Shown here: in pieces, positions 55,197 through 62,344 of the stretch
Position numbering within the stretch: position 1 is the stretch's first letter
How the letters are laid out: the number at the start of each line of letters is the position of its first letter
Virus record (IMG/VR): IMGVR_UViG_3300034073_003340
Location: 1-64,000 of that record
Length of the DNA: 64,000 nucleotides
Reading direction: 5' to 3' (one strand)
Position numbers and translations under genes: made by a program
Notes under the pieces: generated by a model
The model's input: the letters and a program-made list of their open reading frames with translations, nothing else
What the model was told of the DNA's origin: nothing
Databases searched by the model: none

Positions 55197-55261
55197 TCAG
55201 GGTTACCTTGTCTATATTCTGGTGTTAATAAATACCTACATAATTGGAAAAAGGATACTTC

Positions 55262-55801
55262 ATGACTAGCCGACAAAAATCCAAAGGTAACGCCTGGGAA
55301 AACGAAATTTGTAAGTTCTTTGGAGAAACCCTGGGAGGTAACTTTCAGCGAGTCCCAAACTCAGGAGCATACATCGGTGGTAAGAACGTATACAGAAAAG
55401 ATCAATTATCTGAGGGACAGGCGCGAGCTGCCAAAGGGGATATCATCCCACCGGATGATCTACCAAAATTGAATATCGAAGCCAAGAACTATGGTGATAT
55501 TGCGTTCCATCAGATTCTTGACGGATGCTGTAAGCAACTTGACACCTGGATTGATCAAACTGAGGAACCAGCAGATCCTGGTGATTTCTCTATGACCATT
55601 TTTAAGATCACCCGCAGGGGAAGTTGGGTCGCTTTCAAATCAGAGAATCTGGCTAATTTTGATATGACTGGCTTGTCTTATGTTACGTATCGAAAAGGCT
55701 TTGGATCTGAAAATGCCTGTGATTATATCATTGTCAGTCACGTCCCATTTTTCACCCAAAACAAGTTGGCAGTGAGAAAATTAGGTGGCGCTGAAAATTG
55801 A
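55262..55801 (+). CDS. Holliday junction resolvase (Hjc-type PD-(D/E)xK)
   Basis: SKSKGN-x-WE-x-EI, F-x-RVPNSGA, GDII-x-P and IEAKNY. Confidence 0.85.
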   Translation: MTSRQKSKGNAWENEICKFFGETLGGNFQRVPNSGAYIGGKNVYRKDQLSEGQARAAKGDIIPPDDLPKLNIEAKNYGDIAFHQILDGCCKQLDTWIDQTEEPADPGDFSMTIFKITRRGSWVAFKSENLANFDMTGLSYVTYRKGFGSENACDYIIVSHVPFFTQNKLAVRKLGGAEN

Positions 55802-56787: not shown

Positions 56788-57102
56788 TTAGGTCCAAACT
56801 AATTTGAACATTAAAGCGTGATCAGGGTTTTTAAAGAAGATCTTCATATGTGTTTGTCTATTTGTAAAATGAGGTTCAAGATATGGGTCTATATCGCCGT
56901 ATGGAATCCATGCCCAATTGTAATGAAATTGGGTTATTGCCGCGATAGCTTCGTCTTCAGTCCACCATATCATGGTATCACCGGGTCCAGCTATACTCTC
57001 AAGGCAACTTTTTATCTCATTACTCATATAGCATCTGGACTGAGTTTTAGACCAGACACTAGCAGACTGTAGAGGAAGTATAATGCTCTTGATTACAGCC
57101 AT
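56788..57102 (-). CDS. Hypothetical protein
   Basis: Ends F-x-N-x-x-HALMFKLVW, similar to the next gene. Confidence 0.6.
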   Translation of the reverse strand: MAVIKSIILPLQSASVWSKTQSRCYMSNEIKSCLESIAGPGDTMIWWTEDEAIAAITQFHYNWAWIPYGDIDPYLEPHFTNRQTHMKIFFKNPDHALMFKLVWT

Positions 57103-57317
57103 GTGAGTTTGAACCTCAACGCATCACTTATGTTCTTAAAAGAAAAGATTGTTGAAAACGCGTCTGGATTCGCTGTCCAAGACCATTCCTTTTCATTCAA
57201 GTTATCCAACAACCACTTATGGCAATCTGGGGTTATTTGTATTCTCTCCCAGATATCGTATGATACACCTTGTCTGCCATCAGCATGTGGTGCTACTTCA
57301 ATGTTGATGTGGATCAT
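57093..57317 (-). CDS. Hypothetical protein
   Basis: Ends F[13 protein letters not shown]. Confidence 0.6.
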
Positions 57318-58176
57318 CTACAAACATTCCACAACTAGCCTTGACATCAAAGCCGACTCTTGGAACAATCCTACTACTCTCATTACCAAACGCCTCAGCA
57401 AGAATATCAAAGTTTCGCTGTATGATCTCTTCACTGGGTTCATTACCTTGAGCTGGGCTATAGGGATTATAGCGAACCAAATTGAACTTTACATCTAGAC
57501 TGCGAACCAAGATAGCCATAATGATTTCTTCCAAGACTTCAAGACTATCATTTTGGTCCTCAATAAAAGACCAATGAAGAGTAACAAGCTGACCAGTCTT
57601 TTGCTGCCATTCCACAAGCTTCCATAACGCATCATGTGGGTTCATTGACTTAGGAAGCCATCTTTTTCGAAAGTCGTCTCTCATAGAATAGAGAGAATAA
57701 TAGATCTGTGCCCCAGTGTCACCAAAGATGTCATAAAGACTACGATCTGAAACCTCTTCTGGCATAATTGTGCTGATGTTGTATTTGGCTATCAGAGCGT
57801 GTTGCTCTGCGAGGCTCTGTAAGGGCCTACAAACATCATCCCACTTAGATAGCACTGTGGGGTTAGATAACGGCTCACCACGCGCCATGAAGTTGAAATT
57901 GACCCTCTGGGCATCATCAAACTGACGATAATGACGAAACACCTGCAGGGCTTGGTTTTCGTAGTCCCAAGCACTAGCAGGTGTCATCATAGTTTGGCGA
58001 GTCTGAGTCAAATGACAAAACCTACAAGCTTTATTACAACCTGTGTGGCTGCTCAAATAGGTTATAAAATAATCCTCTTGGCGCCGTACATACCTAGCCT
58101 CAAAGGCTCCTTTGTCATCGTGTGGGATGACAAAATTTACACTGGCATCTTCGGCGCTATAGAGGACTCTAGTCAT
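57298..58176 (-). CDS. RlmN/Cfr-like radical SAM enzyme
   Basis: [13 protein letters not shown] (CxxxCxxC), FMARGEP (cf. MGMGEP), SL-x-S, ND, NL-x-x-YNP and ASCG. Confidence 0.8.
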
Positions 58177-59953
58177 TGGCTTCCGTATCTGTTACAAATG
58201 TTGTGAAGTTGTTTTCCTTTTGAACCAGAAGTATCCGTGGCACACGACTGACCAAGCTGTCATTATGTGAAATTAGAAAAACGTTCTTACCACGGTCGCG
58301 GGTCATCTTCTTGAGAATCTCGAGAGCCAAATCCATACCAGCCGGATCCATACCAGAGTCAACGAGTTCGTCAATCATCAGTAGGTTCAGGGGCTTGTTC
58401 ATGGTTTCCCAAACATCTCTAAACGACCACGCTAGTGAAAGAACCAAACGGTTGGCTTCACCATTGCTCAGCTGCGCAAAGTCATATTCCTTACCAAGCA
58501 ACATGATCTCAACAGACAGATCGCTCTGGAAGCTTACTTCGTGAGGAAGCTGAACCTTGTCCAGATAACTGTTGAGACGGACGTTCAGATAGCTTAGGTT
58601 CTGATCAATAATCTTTTTGCGAATAAAGGAGTTCTTGTCTGTAAGCAGCTTGACCAGAAAGTTCTGATGTTCCTGAAGTCGACTCAACTCGTTGAGGTAG
58701 TCATAGGAGATATCTTGAAGACCAGAAGTGCTCAAAGTGGCAATCTGATCAAGATATGGCGACTCGACCGCCACTTCTCTGTTGATATCGCTTATCAGTT
58801 TGTCCAGAGTATGACGATGATTTAGAGCTTGTTCCATGTTGTCATAATTGACAACAGGCGCGCTTCCCAAAGCCTCGAGATCACCTATTGCCTTTTCTAG
58901 ATCCGTCGCCGCAGCATAGAGATCAGTTGCGGCAACTTCTCGTTCCTGTAAAAGTTTGGATTTGCGATCCTGTAAATCTGCTAGAATTTCCGCATGTTTT
59001 TCACTGTGAACTTCCTGGCCACAAGTGTGACATAGGTTTTCATTAGCCATGCTGAGCTGGCTTTCGATGCGCTCAATATTACTATCAATTGAGTTGAAGG
59101 CTCTTTCTAGTCTAGAAGCATCGCGTTCAAAGCGAGCAACTTCCTGACTAAGGCGATTGAATTCAACTAGAGTTCTCTGATTGTTGATTTCAACTTCAAT
59201 ATCAATCTCGTTTAGATTGTCTATCGCCTTTTCCAGTTTAAGCAACTTGGCGGTATGTTCCTTATCCCATACTTTGTTTTTGAAATTGAGCTCATTAATA
59301 GTCTTTTGGATCTTTTCGTTGGAATCTTTGACAGTCTTAATACGGATTTCTTCTCCTTTGATCTCGTCCTTGATCTGCTTGACGAGTTCTTTGAGCTGAT
59401 CAGCTTTGCTTGACAGCTGGGTGATACCTAGCAATTCTTCAATTACATCACGCTGATCTTTGGCGCTCATATCAAGGAATGGAACGGTCTTGCTGTGAAG
59501 CGCGACAATATGCTTGAATAGCAAATGGGAACACCCAATCGTCTTTTCAATTTCAGCCTGAGTTACTTTGCTTTCGCCATGGGCTTCATCGGTCCCTTCA
59601 GCATTCACCAATCCATCGTTTACATAAAAGCGCAAAAAGTTTGGTTTGCGGCCGCGCTCAATACGGTAATTCTTGTTACCGATATCAAAATCCAGACTTA
59701 CGCTCATCTGCTTTTGATTGGTTTTGTTGACGAGGTTATCTCTTTTAATCGCAGTAAGAGGAAGACCATAAATCGCATAGCAGATGGCTTGTATCAAGGT
59801 CGTTTTACCAACACCATTTCTGCTACCACCTGACCCCAGATCTACATTTTCACCAAGAATCAGTGTCAAGCCGTGCTCGTCAAGATTCACGGCCTGCGTG
59901 GTGTTTCCTACACTGAGGAAGTTCTTCATCGTAACGGTTCGAATTTTTATCAT
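58169..59953 (-). CDS. SbcC/Rad50-like ATPase (T4 gp46-like)
   Basis: NFLS-x-G, NGVGKTT Walker A, CHTC zinc hook, LSNGE signature, IDE Walker B and ISH. Confidence 0.95.
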
Positions 59954-60294
59954 TCTGTGTTCTTTCGACCCAAATAGAGGTTTACCCGTGCTAGAACTGA
60001 TGAGGCATTGCCCACCTGTCCTTCAAAATTTATACCGGTAGACAGTTTGACCAGAACGGCGTCTAGTTCCAAAGGGTCTACCGTGAATACCATGAAGCCA
60101 TTCATGAGCATCAGGATACCATACTCTACATTCTGATGATCTAGAATGTCAGTTACTGCGTTGGCGGTATTTTGAAAATCTGCTGAGCTCATGATTTGAT
60201 TCTTTTTTACAAACTCATATACGAACTCAAATTTTCTAGAGCTGTCTGGTTTACTAGCCGAAATGAAATCAATCTGCCACGGTTCCAAAATCAT
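59950..60294 (-). CDS. Hypothetical protein between gp47 and gp46
   Basis: 114 aa, coupled on both sides. Confidence 0.6.
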   Translation of the reverse strand: MILEPWQIDFISASKPDSSRKFEFVYEFVKKNQIMSSADFQNTANAVTDILDHQNVEYGILMLMNGFMVFTVDPLELDAVLVKLSTGINFEGQVGNASSVLARVNLYLGRKNTE

Positions 60295-61319
60295 GAAAGA
60301 CCTCGGTAAATTTCAATCAGTAGATTCTTGTCTACGGTCAGGCTATCAATACCCTTGAGGCCTTCGATGACAATCTGATCAACCGATTGGAAGATAACGT
60401 CCTCACCAAAAGATTGCTCTTCATTTTCCTTGGTTCCGGGCATGATATCAATTTTGCGAGGACTGAATTGAGCAGCAAATGTGTCCTTTATAAACTGCGC
60501 CTCATCATGATTGACCGGAATATCACAGGTGATACGAGCATAGGTTTTGTCATCAATAAAGCTAGTTGGTGATTCCAGGATCTCAGTCAGCTTCAGAGTT
60601 CGATACTTTGGAGCATCAGGCCATGCTATGAACTCGGGTTCCTGCCCCCATTCCAGGAACATCATACCACGCTCATCATCCCACGCATCAGCAAAGTTGT
60701 GCGGGAATGGATTGCCCAGATAACAAATTTTGTTCTTGGCTTGTCTCTTATGGAAATGACCCGAGAATGCCCAATATTTGACGTCATCAAAGGCTGAAGC
60801 ATTGATCCCACCATGGTCTGGCATTTCAACCATGGCGTTCATCATAAAATGTGGCAACTCAAAATGACCAAACATATAGTCTGACTTTTTGGCCAGTTTG
60901 CTTACCTTTTTGCTATCGTCACCCACTAACCAGGGACAGAATGTAACTCCTCCAACTGTTAGAAAGTCATTGATAATCGTGACGTTCTTGAGATTTCTAC
61001 CAATAGCCACGCTGCTGATTTCACGCTTCTCTTTGTAATAGAGATCATGGTTACCAGGAATAAAGTAAAAGTGCTCAAAGGCATCTGCTAACCTTTCCAT
61101 ATTGGAAAGTGAATAGTTCAGCGTTGAGACATGGATTGCGTGCCGATTGTCATGCCAATCACCTGTGAAGATGATGGTGTCAACATCCCTTGATTTGGCT
61201 TGTTCAATAAACCATTTTACAAAATTTTCACAATCCTGGTTGTGCTGTCGGTCATTGTTCTTTTTACCGAAATGGATATCTGTAAAAACTGCTGCTCGCT
61301 TGAAGAGCTTTTCGCTCAT
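60291..61319 (-). CDS. SbcD/Mre11-like nuclease (T4 gp47-like)
   Basis: TDIHFG, GDW, GNHD, GHFE and SGHFH metallophosphoesterase motifs. Confidence 0.95.
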   Translation of the reverse strand: MSEKLFKRAAVFTDIHFGKKNNDRQHNQDCENFVKWFIEQAKSRDVDTIIFTGDWHDNRHAIHVSTLNYSLSNMERLADAFEHFYFIPGNHDLYYKEKREISSVAIGRNLKNVTIINDFLTVGGVTFCPWLVGDDSKKVSKLAKKSDYMFGHFELPHFMMNAMVEMPDHGGINASAFDDVKYWAFSGHFHKRQAKNKICYLGNPFPHNFADAWDDERGMMFLEWGQEPEFIAWPDAPKYRTLKLTEILESPTSFIDDKTYARITCDIPVNHDEAQFIKDTFAAQFSPRKIDIMPGTKENEEQSFGEDVIFQSVDQIVIEGLKGIDSLTVDKNLLIEIYRGLS

Positions 61320-61375: not shown

Positions 61376-62344
61376 TTATTGGTCTGGCATCTGGTTCTTC
61401 GCTAGATAAGCGGCGACACGAGCTTTGCGGGCTTCCTCTTCTTCGGGAGTCAAGACAACCTTTTCAATTTTCACGTTGTTTGGTGAAGTCTTGCGGACAA
61501 GCTTCTTGGCCTCTGGTGCTTCCCCGTTGGCGATAGCCCTCTGACTCAGGGAGTTATCTACCTGTCTAGTCATCGATGGAGTTACACCGTGCATAACCAA
61601 CATATCGTCCCTGATATTCTGATTACGCTTTTCTAGATTTAGAACGCGAGTAAATGCGTTGCTAACTGTCACGGTATAGTAGGCAAAAGGGTTGTCTGAG
61701 CGAGCTTCGTTGAACTGAAGGCCAACTAGACTTAGCTGAAGCAATGCCTGACTCCTCATTTCATCAACATAGGTGTAGCCACGCCAGTTTCCGCGCTGCG
61801 AATATCTTTCAACCAGTTTCATAAACATATTGGCCAAACGATTTGTAATCTTACCATGTGTTTGGCAGAATTCACCGTTTTCCAAGGCATCCTTCCAATG
61901 AGATCTACCAACTTCCTTGGCACCCTCATCTTCGGTTATGATGTAGTGTTTGAAAGGTGGAAAGTTCAAACGAACATGGTTATCTGCCACACTTTTAGGA
62001 TTCTTTACACGACCGTCTTCCAGAGGAATGTGCTCATGTGTCATTACTCTCCACACAATACTATCAACTGGAATCGACAGTGGGTCAATTTCTTCAATTT
62101 TGATCTGATGATTTTTAAGACCTTTTTCCTTTTGGATTAGCTTTTCAGCCTGCATCATCTTCTTGGCCTTGCTCTCACGAACCGACTGGATGAGCTCTAG
62201 ATTGATTTCATCAAGCGATCCTACGATACAGTCATAGGATGAATACTTGGGATCTACAAAATAGGAAAAGGTATTCTTGGACTTGTGAATCTCGCTCAGG
62301 AGTTCTTTGTTGGTTAGATAATTGACCTTGGGTGTAATAGCCAT
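61376..62344 (-). CDS. Late-transcription sigma factor (T4 gp55-like)
   Basis: NYL-x-NKELL, NWRGYTY-x-DEM and NPFAYYT. Confidence 0.85.
   Translation of the reverse strand: MAITPKVNYLTNKELLSEIHKSKNTFSYFVDPKYSSYDCIVGSLDEINLELIQSVRESKAKKMMQAEKLIQKEKGLKNHQIKIEEIDPLSIPVDSIVWRVMTHEHIPLEDGRVKNPKSVADNHVRLNFPPFKHYIITEDEGAKEVGRSHWKDALENGEFCQTHGKITNRLANMFMKLVERYSQRGNWRGYTYVDEMRSQALLQLSLVGLQFNEARSDNPFAYYTVTVSNAFTRVLNLEKRNQNIRDDMLVMHGVTPSMTRQVDNSLSQRAIANGEAPEAKKLVRKTSPNNVKIEKVVLTPEEEEARKARVAAYLAKNQMPDQ

What the first reader, a model, noticed from the sequence alone, without database searches (positions are those of the whole stretch)
57298..58176. RlmN/Cfr-like radical SAM enzyme lacking the resolving cysteine, coupled to gp46
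Seen: CxxxCxxC and the C-terminal ASCG (methyl-accepting Cys) are kept, but the Cys preceding SSQVGC is Tyr (YLSSHTGC), and MGMGEP is FMARGEP. Established: RlmN/Cfr need both cysteines to methylate adenosine and release RNA. Inference: altered chemistry, such as a stable protein-RNA crosslink, a different substrate or DNA modification.
Basis: partly seen in the sequence, partly recalled or inferred. Interest (0 to 1): 0.6.

Follow-up and report, generated by a model that had tools for sequence, protein, structure and literature searches.

The report
Phage RlmN-like enzyme with tyrosine swap
A giant phage carries an intact radical-SAM enzyme related to the RNA methylases RlmN/Cfr in which one of the two catalytic cysteines is always a tyrosine; it belongs to a large, mostly viral, unstudied family that probably does related chemistry on a different target.

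Summary
ORF 57298-58176(-) encodes a 292-aa RlmN/Cfr-fold protein (AF2 pLDDT 96.6; TM 0.78 to RlmN). It keeps CxxxCxxC and the methyl-carrier Cys (C282 = C355). Tyr40 sits exactly where RlmN C118 / Cfr C105 lies.

This is a family trait, not a one-off. Y40 is invariant in 147/147 representatives at 50% identity or less. No other Cys is conserved. The HhH2 RNA-binding N-domain is absent, and about a dozen RlmN-invariant residues are switched.

The family (PHROG 27142; at least 331 50%-identity clusters) is mostly in jumbo phages. It also occurs on Pseudomonas megaplasmids and in Planctomycetota/Myxococcota. There it sits in a conserved cassette with an AbiEii-type nucleotidyltransferase, an LRR protein and a sulfotransferase-like protein, in genomes that also have a normal RlmN.

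The overlap with gp46 holds only in this phage lineage. Phosso has the same gene order without the gene.

Best reading: an active class-A-like radical SAM enzyme with Tyr as proton or H-atom handler, acting on a nucleic-acid or nucleotide target other than A2503/A37. Substrate and product are unknown. I found no paper on it. It is a new variant of a known kind.

The parts
57298..58176 (-). 292-aa RlmN/Cfr-fold radical SAM protein (P0001), member of PHROG 27142
   Evidence: NCBIfam RlmN TIGR00048 E 6e-19, but 68 bits against a cut-off of 290. PHROG 27142 E 1e-110. AF2 pLDDT 96.6. Foldseek top hits are RlmN 6fz6/3rfa/5hr7, TMq 0.73-0.78.
58057..58059 (-). Tyr40 codon, at the position of RlmN C118 / Cfr C105 (the proton-abstracting 'resolving' Cys)
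   Evidence: Alignments. Invariant in 147/147 diverse representatives. Coordinates checked.
58015..58038 (-). C47-x3-C51-x2-C54, the radical SAM [4Fe-4S] motif
   Evidence: Invariant in the family. Aligns with RlmN C125/C129/C132.
57871..57888 (-). M97-A-R-G-E-P102, the counterpart of RlmN MGMGEP (SAM-binding GxE). R99 is family-specific.
57331..57333 (-). Cys282 codon in the C-terminal loop '[13 protein letters not shown]', counterpart of the methyl-carrying C355 (RlmN) / C338 (Cfr)
   Evidence: Invariant in 149/149.
58169..59953 (-). gp46-like Rad50/SbcC ATPase. Its stop codon overlaps the rSAM start by 8 nt.
   Evidence: The same overlap occurs in L084 and L085.
60291..61319 (-). gp47-like Mre11/SbcD nuclease, same operon
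   Evidence: The Metallophos assignment comes from the syntenic genes of L084/L085.
57093..57317 (-). 74-aa ORF overlapping the rSAM stop by 20 nt. No family match. Not conserved next to the rSAM in other lineages.

Best explanation
The gene encodes an intact, selected and probably active enzyme of a large, uncharacterised sister family of the class A radical SAM methylases RlmN/Cfr.

Shown:
- It has the RlmN fold, the [4Fe-4S]/SAM motifs and the C-terminal loop Cys that carries the methyl group in RlmN/Cfr.
- M97 is kept; it matches RlmN M176, which is proposed to stabilise the thiyl radical.
- An invariant Tyr sits where RlmN/Cfr have the proton-abstracting Cys.
- The HhH2 RNA-docking domain is missing, and a set of RlmN-invariant residues is switched.

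Inferred:
- The enzyme still methylates Cys282 from one SAM and makes 5'-dA radical from a second SAM.
- It then adds the Cys-CH2 radical to an sp2 carbon of a base.
- Tyr40, as tyrosinate base and/or H-atom donor, triggers or completes release of the adduct, so no second Cys is needed.
- The Tyr side chain reaches about 5 A further than Cys, and the docking domain and several basic residues are gone. The substrate must therefore sit differently and is probably not A2503 or A37 of a folded rRNA/tRNA recognised in the RlmN way.
- The target is most likely a nucleic acid or nucleotide. I place RNA (tRNA) somewhat ahead of DNA.

In phages it is a free-standing, horizontally mobile accessory gene. 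In this lineage it was inserted directly behind gp46.
For: Fold and motifs.

Purifying selection: a diverse family (at least 331 clusters at 50% identity with E<1e-30) has 23 invariant columns, including Y40, C47/51/54, C282, G100, S135, N209 and N237.

SAM and mCys machinery shared with canonical RlmN; family-specific switches at C118Y, H235Y, E278H, M178R, A231Y, I232Y and P310R; loss of R141/R206/R344 and of the whole HhH2 domain (one search shows model coverage 76-342).

Mechanism papers: the second Cys is a proton-abstracting base whose C-beta lies 3.6 A from the target carbon, and the N-domain is crucial for RNA binding (PMC9692996; PMC13001441).

Distinct function: five of five cellular genomes with the Tyr form also have a canonical RlmN above cut-off.

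Stand-alone and mobile: no neighbour family is shared by more than 2 of 28 viral lineages, and Phosso has the same synteny without the gene.

Nucleic-acid theme of neighbours: Rad50-like, RecA-like, NAD ligase, RtcB, CCA-adding enzyme.

This phage carries 59 tRNA genes.
Against: - No biochemical data exist for any member.
- I could not inspect model coordinates, so the Tyr40-Cys282 geometry is inferred from homology only.
- A Tyr at this site could block the adenine pocket rather than serve it.
- C282 could be an H-atom donor rather than a methyl carrier.
- Gene neighbourhoods point to DNA repair in three lineages and to RNA repair or translation in three others, so the substrate class is unresolved.
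- The Pfam Radical_SAM score is just under its gathering cut-off (28.6 against 29.5 bits).
Confidence: 0.5

Rival explanations
1. Suicide crosslinker. Without the second Cys, the Cys282-CH2-base adduct cannot be resolved. The protein then ends covalently tied to its RNA or DNA target, acting stoichiometrically as a toxin, a shut-off factor or a block.
For: C118A/S RlmN and C105A/S Cfr form exactly such trapped adducts (PMC9692996; PMC13001441). No second Cys is conserved. The cellular clade sits beside an AbiEii-type toxin-like nucleotidyltransferase, a conflict-system setting.
Against: Loss of function at this site would allow any residue, but Tyr is invariant across sequences as low as 40% identical. 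Other active-site positions are co-switched and equally invariant, which looks like re-tuned catalysis. A single-turnover protein is a costly tool against abundant targets.
Confidence: 0.12
2. DNA-directed enzyme. It modifies or repairs phage or host DNA, for example by C-methylating a base or by radical repair in the manner of spore photoproduct lyase, with Cys282 as H donor and Tyr residues as a radical relay. It would work alongside the recombination machinery.
For: The gene lies directly 3' of Rad50-like gp46 here (12 loci), of a RecA-like gene in another lineage (18 loci) and of NAD-dependent DNA ligase in a third (8 loci). Pooled neighbours are rich in nucleotide and DNA metabolism genes. 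The family has several invariant Tyr residues plus one Cys. That spore photoproduct lyase uses a Cys-Tyr relay is from my own knowledge.
Against: These are three different neighbour genes, and replication/recombination modules are large in jumbo phages. Other lineages place it near RtcB, a CCA-adding enzyme, or R2K ATP-grasp/RMF/L12. No DNA-binding domain is present. The nearest structures are RlmN/Cfr by a wide margin (E 4e-15, against 5e-7 for the next fold). Genome-wide modification with two SAM per methyl would be expensive.
Confidence: 0.13
3. Conflict-system component. In cells it works with, or neutralises, the adjacent AbiEii/MenT-like nucleotidyltransferase, whose known relatives act on tRNA 3' ends. 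The stand-alone phage copies would then be counter-defence enzymes that protect or alter tRNA. This reading concerns biological role and is compatible with the best explanation's chemistry.
For: There is a conserved cassette: sulfotransferase-like, LRR protein, AbiEii, then the rSAM transcribed divergently. It occurs in 35 loci of two phyla, and the rSAM clade there is monophyletic (SH-aLRT 100). In L051 the rSAM sits directly upstream of AbiEii with a 2-nt gap, where an antitoxin would be. Neighbour clustering recovered no other conserved gene, so no AbiEi. Phage holders are tRNA-rich or carry tRNA/RNA repair genes nearby.
Against: The window's phage has no AbiEii. The phage clade is separate from the cassette clade. 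The arrangement is mostly divergent, not operonic. That AbiEii relatives target tRNA is literature knowledge about relatives, not tested here.
Confidence: 0.2
4. Decayed or inactive RlmN remnant with no enzymatic role.
For: Scores are far below the RlmN and Cfr cut-offs. A catalytic Cys and a domain are missing.
Against: The frame is intact. The model is very confident. There are 23 invariant columns across hundreds of divergent sequences, including all cluster and SAM motifs. The family is spread over phages, plasmids and chromosomes.
Confidence: 0.03

Closest known systems
RlmN (23S rRNA m2A2503 / tRNA m2A37 class A radical SAM methylase; PDB 3RFA, 5HR7, 6FZ6)
   Same: Fold (TMq 0.73-0.78). 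Beta-extension plus partial TIM barrel. CxxxCxxC. G-E-P, S-T, N-D and N-P SAM motifs. M176 equivalent. C-terminal loop Cys in an A/S-C-G context.
   Different: About 20% identity. 68 bits against a cut-off of 290. Cys118 is replaced by an invariant Tyr. No HhH2 N-domain. RlmN-invariant R141/R206/R344, H235 and E278 are lost or switched. It co-exists with a true RlmN in cellular genomes.
Cfr (23S rRNA m8A2503 methylase; PDB 9P0P and the cryo-EM Cfr C105A-rRNA complex, PMC13001441)
   Same: Best sequence hit in the PDB (E 1e-9). Shares the 'NL(I/V)RYNP' motif and the two-SAM architecture.
   Different: Cfr C105 is Tyr here. The N-domain is absent. 39 bits against a cut-off of 530. There is no evidence of any link to antibiotic resistance.
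C118A/S RlmN and C105A/S Cfr laboratory variants
   Same: They lack the second Cys, as this family does.
   Different: Those are engineered loss-of-function traps. Here the replacement is a conserved Tyr accompanied by co-switched neighbouring residues, which suggests a working alternative.
Other phage RlmN-like proteins (Tunturiibacter phage Tunturi_5 gp170; Klebsiella phage 05F01 gene_104)
   Same: Short RlmN-like proteins of phages without the HhH2 domain, 24-25% identical.
   Different: Tunturi_5 keeps the Cys. 05F01 has Val there and a Cys three residues later. Neither belongs to the Tyr clade.
AbiE (AbiEi/AbiEii) type IV toxin-antitoxin / abortive infection systems
   Same: The cellular clade of the family is linked to an AbiEii-family nucleotidyltransferase (PADLOC E 1e-36).
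   Different: No AbiEi partner. An LRR protein and a sulfotransferase-like protein are present instead. The phage in the window has no AbiEii.

Membership tests
RlmN / Cfr equivalogs (NCBIfam TIGR00048, TIGR04432, NF000424) | Score above the curated whole-protein cut-off | tested here: not met
   68.2 bits against 290 (RlmN). 35.9-39.4 bits against 530-550 (Cfr).
RlmN / Cfr (class A radical SAM methylases) | CxxxCxxC [4Fe-4S] motif and SAM-binding motifs | tested here: met
   C47/C51/C54, G100-E101-P102, S135-T136, N209-D210 and N237-P238 align with the RlmN counterparts and are invariant.
RlmN / Cfr (class A radical SAM methylases) | Methyl-carrying Cys in the C-terminal loop (C355 / C338) | tested here: met
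   C282 aligns with it and is invariant. Its methylation is not testable here.
RlmN / Cfr (class A radical SAM methylases) | Second, proton-abstracting ('resolving') Cys seven residues before the cluster motif (C118 / C105) | tested here: not met
   Tyr40 in this protein and in 147/147 family representatives. No other conserved Cys.
RlmN / Cfr (class A radical SAM methylases) | N-terminal HhH2 RNA-binding domain | tested here: not met
   The match covers model positions 76-342 only. The protein starts in the beta-extension. HhH2-invariant residues have no counterpart.
RlmN / Cfr (class A radical SAM methylases) | RlmN-type three-dimensional fold | tested here: met
   AF2 model pLDDT 96.6. Foldseek E 4e-15, TMq 0.78 to 6FZ6 and 0.77 to 3RFA. 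The next fold is at E 5e-7.
RlmN / Cfr (class A radical SAM methylases) | Forms m2A or m8A on A2503 / A37 | not testable with these tools
   Needs an anaerobic assay and nucleoside mass spectrometry.
Radical SAM superfamily (Pfam PF04055) | Pfam gathering score | tested here: inconclusive
   28.6 bits against a cut-off of 29.5. Motif and fold are clearly radical SAM.
PHROG 27142 ('Fe-S-cluster redox domain-containing') | Full-length profile match | tested here: met
   E 9.7e-111, residues 7-286 on profile positions 11-299 of 300.
AbiEii-LRR-sulfotransferase cassette of the cellular clade | AbiEii-family gene next to the rSAM, or anywhere in the genome | tested here: not met
   No PF08843 match in the 436-kb phage genome. 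The window protein lies in a different clade.
Spore photoproduct lyase-type radical SAM repair enzymes | Closest structural or sequence kin | tested here: not met
   Not among the listed Foldseek matches, which RlmN/Cfr dominate. No family hit.

The most novel reading that the evidence does not exclude
The Tyr-for-Cys family carries out a class-A-type radical reaction with a new way of ending it. Tyr40 would act as base or H-atom donor. Alternatively the end product could be a deliberate covalent adduct, or even a Cys282-CH2-Tyr40 self-crosslink. The target would be new, in phage-host conflict, for instance tRNA ends or loops attacked by AbiEii/MenT-type nucleotidyltransferases. That would make it both a new radical SAM mechanism and a new counter-defence enzyme.
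Probability: 0.25. Interest if true: 0.8.

Novelty: new variant of a known kind. Interest (0 to 1): 0.62.

Why it matters
RlmN and Cfr are the textbook case of methylation through a protein-bound methylene radical. The role of the second cysteine in that reaction has been debated for 15 years. This is a natural family with hundreds of 50%-identity clusters and at least 2,800 sequences in which that residue is always tyrosine, while the rest of the machinery is kept. It therefore offers a direct test of what the resolving residue must do.

The family may also reveal a new nucleic-acid modification made by jumbo phages. Its link to an AbiEii-type cassette in Planctomycetota and Myxococcota suggests a role in toxin or defence biology. 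Culturable systems exist for testing it: Caulobacter phage CcrColossus gp283 and Pseudomonas phage 201phi2-1 gp434.

It also matters for annotation. These genes are widely labelled 'RlmN' or '23S rRNA (adenine2503-C2)-methyltransferase', and the evidence here does not support those labels.

Tried and rejected
- Conserved small partner or substrate ORF downstream: rejected. The downstream ORFs of the window, CcrColossus and 201phi2-1 show no similarity.
- Conserved neighbour in phages: none is shared by more than 2 of 28 lineages. Pooled neighbours give no recurrent family.
- Informative domain fusions in longer family members: none. One has only an HNH insertion.
- Another Cys taking over: rejected.
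- Net charge and pI comparison to guess nucleic-acid binding: uninformative.
- Promoter and terminator scan around the operon: counts are no higher than in shuffled sequence.
- Complex prediction of the cassette rSAM with its AbiEii neighbour (L051): no answer. This is not evidence either way.
- PADLOC: no defence-system model matches the rSAM, the LRR protein or the sulfotransferase-like protein.
- Ophion, a radical-SAM anti-jumbo-phage system in a 2025 preprint: unrelated, because its rSAM is viperin-like.
- Literature searches for a described phage RlmN-like or Tyr clade: nothing found. Kaminska et al. [quoted passage not shown]
- Sequencing runs: only DNA metagenomes (subsurface, soil, wastewater) and no RNA, so expression could not be checked and read laying was not used.

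Full report
WHAT IS THERE

The window is the first 64 kb of a complete 435,856-bp phage genome with direct terminal repeats. By gp46, its nearest named relatives are Sinorhizobium phage Phosso (59%) and Agrobacterium phage Atu_ph07 (48%). It was found in subsurface and soil metagenomes.

ORF 57298..58176 on the minus strand is intact and encodes 292 residues. Its scores are:
- RlmN model TIGR00048: E 6e-19, but only 68 bits against a cut-off of 290, covering model positions 76-342 of 355.
- Cfr models: 36-39 bits against cut-offs of 530-550.
- Pfam Radical_SAM: 28.6 bits against 29.5.
- PHROG 27142: E 1e-110.

An AlphaFold2 model built on 109 homologues has pLDDT 96.6. Its best structural matches are RlmN structures (6FZ6, 3RFA, 5HR7; TMq 0.73-0.78, E down to 4e-15). 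Cfr follows, and other radical SAM folds appear only from E 5e-7.

Residue-level alignments to PDB chains give three placements:
- C47/C51/C54 fall on the cluster motif.
- C282, in KASCGMF, falls on the methyl-carrying C355 (RlmN) / C338 (Cfr).
- Tyr40 falls exactly on Cfr C105 and on the alanine of the C118A RlmN crystal form.

MAFFT alignments agree. Codon coordinates were checked. The protein has five cysteines in all. The fifth, C116, is not conserved.

IT IS A FAMILY TRAIT

A search of 5.8 billion proteins gave 2,824 hits at E<=0.001. An exhaustive HMMER scan of 1.84 billion 50%-identity representatives gave 331 clusters at E<1e-30.

Conservation across these sets:
- Y40 is present in 120/120 close homologues.
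- Y40 is present in 147/147 representatives at 40-56% identity.
- C47, C51, C54 and C282 are invariant.
- No other column is Cys in more than 22% of sequences.

I compared the family with eight canonical RlmN sequences (E. coli numbers printed there are one too low).

Kept in the family: the SAM-binding and mCys machinery, that is G-E-P, S-T, N-D, N-P, the M176 equivalent and the C-G loop.

Switched at positions invariant in both groups: C118 to Y40, K94 to N14, V107 to R28, G177-M178 to A98-R99, A231-I232 to Y159-Y160, H235 to Y163, E278 to H201, P310 to R235, and Q357-L358 to M284-F285.

Lost: RlmN-invariant R141, R206 and R344, and the entire HhH2 N-terminal domain.

Other short phage RlmN-like proteins differ at the Tyr site. 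Tunturi_5 gp170 keeps the Cys. Klebsiella phage 05F01 gene_104 has Val, with a Cys three residues later. The weak 'Bacteriophage sp.' and Listeria phage hits are ordinary RlmN with the Cys.

WHERE THE FAMILY LIVES

Named phage holders:
- Caulobacter phages CcrColossus and CcrPW.
- Eight Brevundimonas jumbo phages.
- Pseudomonas chimalliviruses: 201phi2-1, Phabio, Psa21, D6, RVTF4, Viktualia.

Phosso and Atu_ph07 are not among them. ESM Atlas clusters are about 75% viral.

A scan of one genome per prokaryote species found 73 loci. These include:
- Pseudomonas megaplasmids of about 1 Mb.
- Isolates of Achromobacter, Acetobacter, Nocardia, Mesorhizobium and others.
- Many Planctomycetota and Myxococcota.

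Seventy-two of the 73 have the Tyr. The exception is a canonical RlmN. All five cellular genomes I tested also carry a canonical RlmN above its cut-off (315-439 bits). The Tyr form is therefore an extra paralogue and not the housekeeping enzyme.

CONTEXT IN CELLS

In 35 Planctomycetota/Myxococcota loci the gene is part of a conserved cassette:
- a sulfotransferase-like protein;
- an LRR-only protein of 520-700 aa;
- an AbiEii-family nucleotidyltransferase (Pfam E 6e-23; PADLOC AbiEii E 1e-36);
- the rSAM, transcribed divergently.

In L051 the order is rSAM, AbiEii, LRR on one strand, with a 2-nt gap between the first two. Neighbour clustering recovered no other conserved gene, so no AbiEi antitoxin. 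These rSAMs form one clade (SH-aLRT 100) that is distinct from the jumbo-phage clade holding the window protein.

CONTEXT IN PHAGES

In this lineage the order gp55-like, gp47, small ORF, gp46, rSAM recurs with the same 8-nt overlap (AATGACTAG). It is seen in relatives whose rSAM is 79% and 65% identical. Phosso has the same order without the rSAM. The gene is therefore an accessory insertion.

Across 87 viral loci in 28 lineages, no neighbour family is shared by more than two lineages. Neighbours differ by lineage:

| Lineage | Neighbour |
|---|---|
| Window lineage (12 loci) | Rad50-like gp46, directly 5' |
| 18 loci | RecA-like, directly 5' |
| 8 loci | NAD-dependent DNA ligase directly 5', plus a PARP-like gene |
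| 9 loci (Pseudomonas chimalliviruses) | RtcB, 1.1 kb downstream |
| CcrColossus, Gurke | tRNA nucleotidyltransferase, 2.3 kb downstream |
| Two contigs over 500 kb | R2K ATP-grasp, RMF, L7/L12 |

Pooled neighbours of 26 lineages are a mix of nucleotide and DNA metabolism genes with no recurrent partner. The theme is nucleic-acid transactions, but it does not separate DNA from RNA. The phage itself has 59 tRNA genes, one R2K ATP-grasp gene elsewhere and no AbiEii.

HOW IT LIKELY WORKS

Current work on RlmN/Cfr describes these steps (PMC9692996; PMC13001441):
1. SAM methylates the loop Cys.
2. 5'-dA radical abstracts an H atom from that methyl group.
3. The methylene radical adds to C2 or C8 of the adenine.
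4. The second Cys abstracts the C2/C8 proton.
5. This triggers radical fragmentation to a thiyl radical plus an enamine, which tautomerises to the methyl product.

The same work reports that the C-beta of the Cys-to-Ala residue lies 3.6 A from the target carbon, and that the HhH2 domain is crucial for RNA docking.

Everything needed for steps 1 to 3 is conserved in this family. I therefore infer that the family still makes a Cys282-CH2 radical and adds it to an sp2 carbon. I also infer that Tyr40, as tyrosinate base and/or H-atom donor to the thiyl or product radical, replaces the Cys in steps 4 and 5.

Tyr reaches much further than Cys, and the docking domain and several basic residues are gone. 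The substrate must therefore be held differently and is probably not A2503/A37 recognised as RlmN recognises it.

What is shown: the fold, the motifs, the conservation pattern, the distribution and the gene contexts. What is inferred: activity, the role of Tyr, and the nature of the substrate.

RIVALS
- Natural suicide crosslinker. This fits the mutant phenotypes. It does not explain why Tyr, and co-switched neighbouring residues, are invariant.
- DNA-directed role. Three lineages with recombination or repair neighbours hint at it. Other lineages point to RNA repair or translation genes.
- Conflict-system role tied to AbiEii-type nucleotidyltransferases. The cellular cassette suggests it, and it is compatible with the chemistry proposed above. 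The complex prediction gave no answer.
- Decay. The conservation pattern excludes it.

NOVELTY

The family is already catalogued (PHROG 27142) and routinely mislabelled as RlmN. In the searchable literature I found no description of the Tyr switch, the missing domain or the AbiEii cassette. It is not a member of RlmN or Cfr as those are defined, because two defining features were tested and not met. It most plausibly works like them up to the resolution step. I rate it a new variant of a known kind and of solid interest to radical SAM and phage biologists.

Noticed in passing
whole genome G000:C1, outside the window (tRNA block about 292-326 kb; tRNA-CUA at 99130-99204 and 293258-293333): ARAGORN finds 59 tRNA genes in the 436-kb phage. 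Two have a CUA anticodon (amber-suppressor type, labelled 'Pyl' by the program). I did not check whether TAG is read through in any gene.
   Followed up: no
L020, L024, L031-L073 (Planctomycetota and Myxococcota genomes), e.g. L020:4084-8834: A conserved four-gene cassette: sulfotransferase-like, LRR-only protein, AbiEii-family nucleotidyltransferase, and the Tyr-type RlmN-like rSAM. It occurs in 35 species of two phyla. No AbiEi was found and no PADLOC system matches. It may be an undescribed toxin or defence module.
   Followed up: partly
L005:2851-3780 (Klebsiella phage 05F01 gene_104): Another short phage RlmN-like protein. It has Val at the resolving-Cys position and a Cys three residues later ('VLSCSHGC'). 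It lies between an ADP-ribosyltransferase-annotated gene and the anaerobic ribonucleotide reductase gene.
   Followed up: no
L007:7115-7945 and L008:9863-10681 (phage contigs of 563 kb and 546 kb): An R2K-clade ATP-grasp gene lies beside the rSAM. Ribosome modulation factor, ribosomal protein L7/L12 and an ART-PolyVal ADP-ribosyltransferase lie nearby. The window's phage has one R2K_3 gene at 102112-102447 of its genome.
   Followed up: partly
window 57093-57317(-) and 56788-57102(-): The two small ORFs after the rSAM share a C-terminal motif, FKNxxxALxFKLxW (BLASTP E 8e-4 over 14 residues). They have no family match and may be a small paralogous family.
   Followed up: partly
window 61376-62344(-): The late sigma factor (gp55-like, PHROG 12791 E 8e-92) is 322 aa, much longer than T4 gp55 (a comparison from memory). 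It heads the gp47-gp46-rSAM gene string.
   Followed up: no
window 55244-55801(+): A PDDEXK_15 / RusA-like Holliday-junction resolvase gene on the opposite strand. It is syntenic in L084, L085 and Phosso.
   Followed up: no
L121:9362-10858 (IMG/VR contig, 359 kb): A phage-encoded WGR-PARP_reg-PARP protein (eukaryote-type poly(ADP-ribose) polymerase architecture) lies 2.8 kb from the rSAM, with an NAD-dependent DNA ligase directly upstream of the rSAM.
   Followed up: no
P0094 (491 aa family member): One family member carries an HNH endonuclease domain at residues 118-153, which may be a mobile-element insertion or a gene-call fusion.
   Followed up: no
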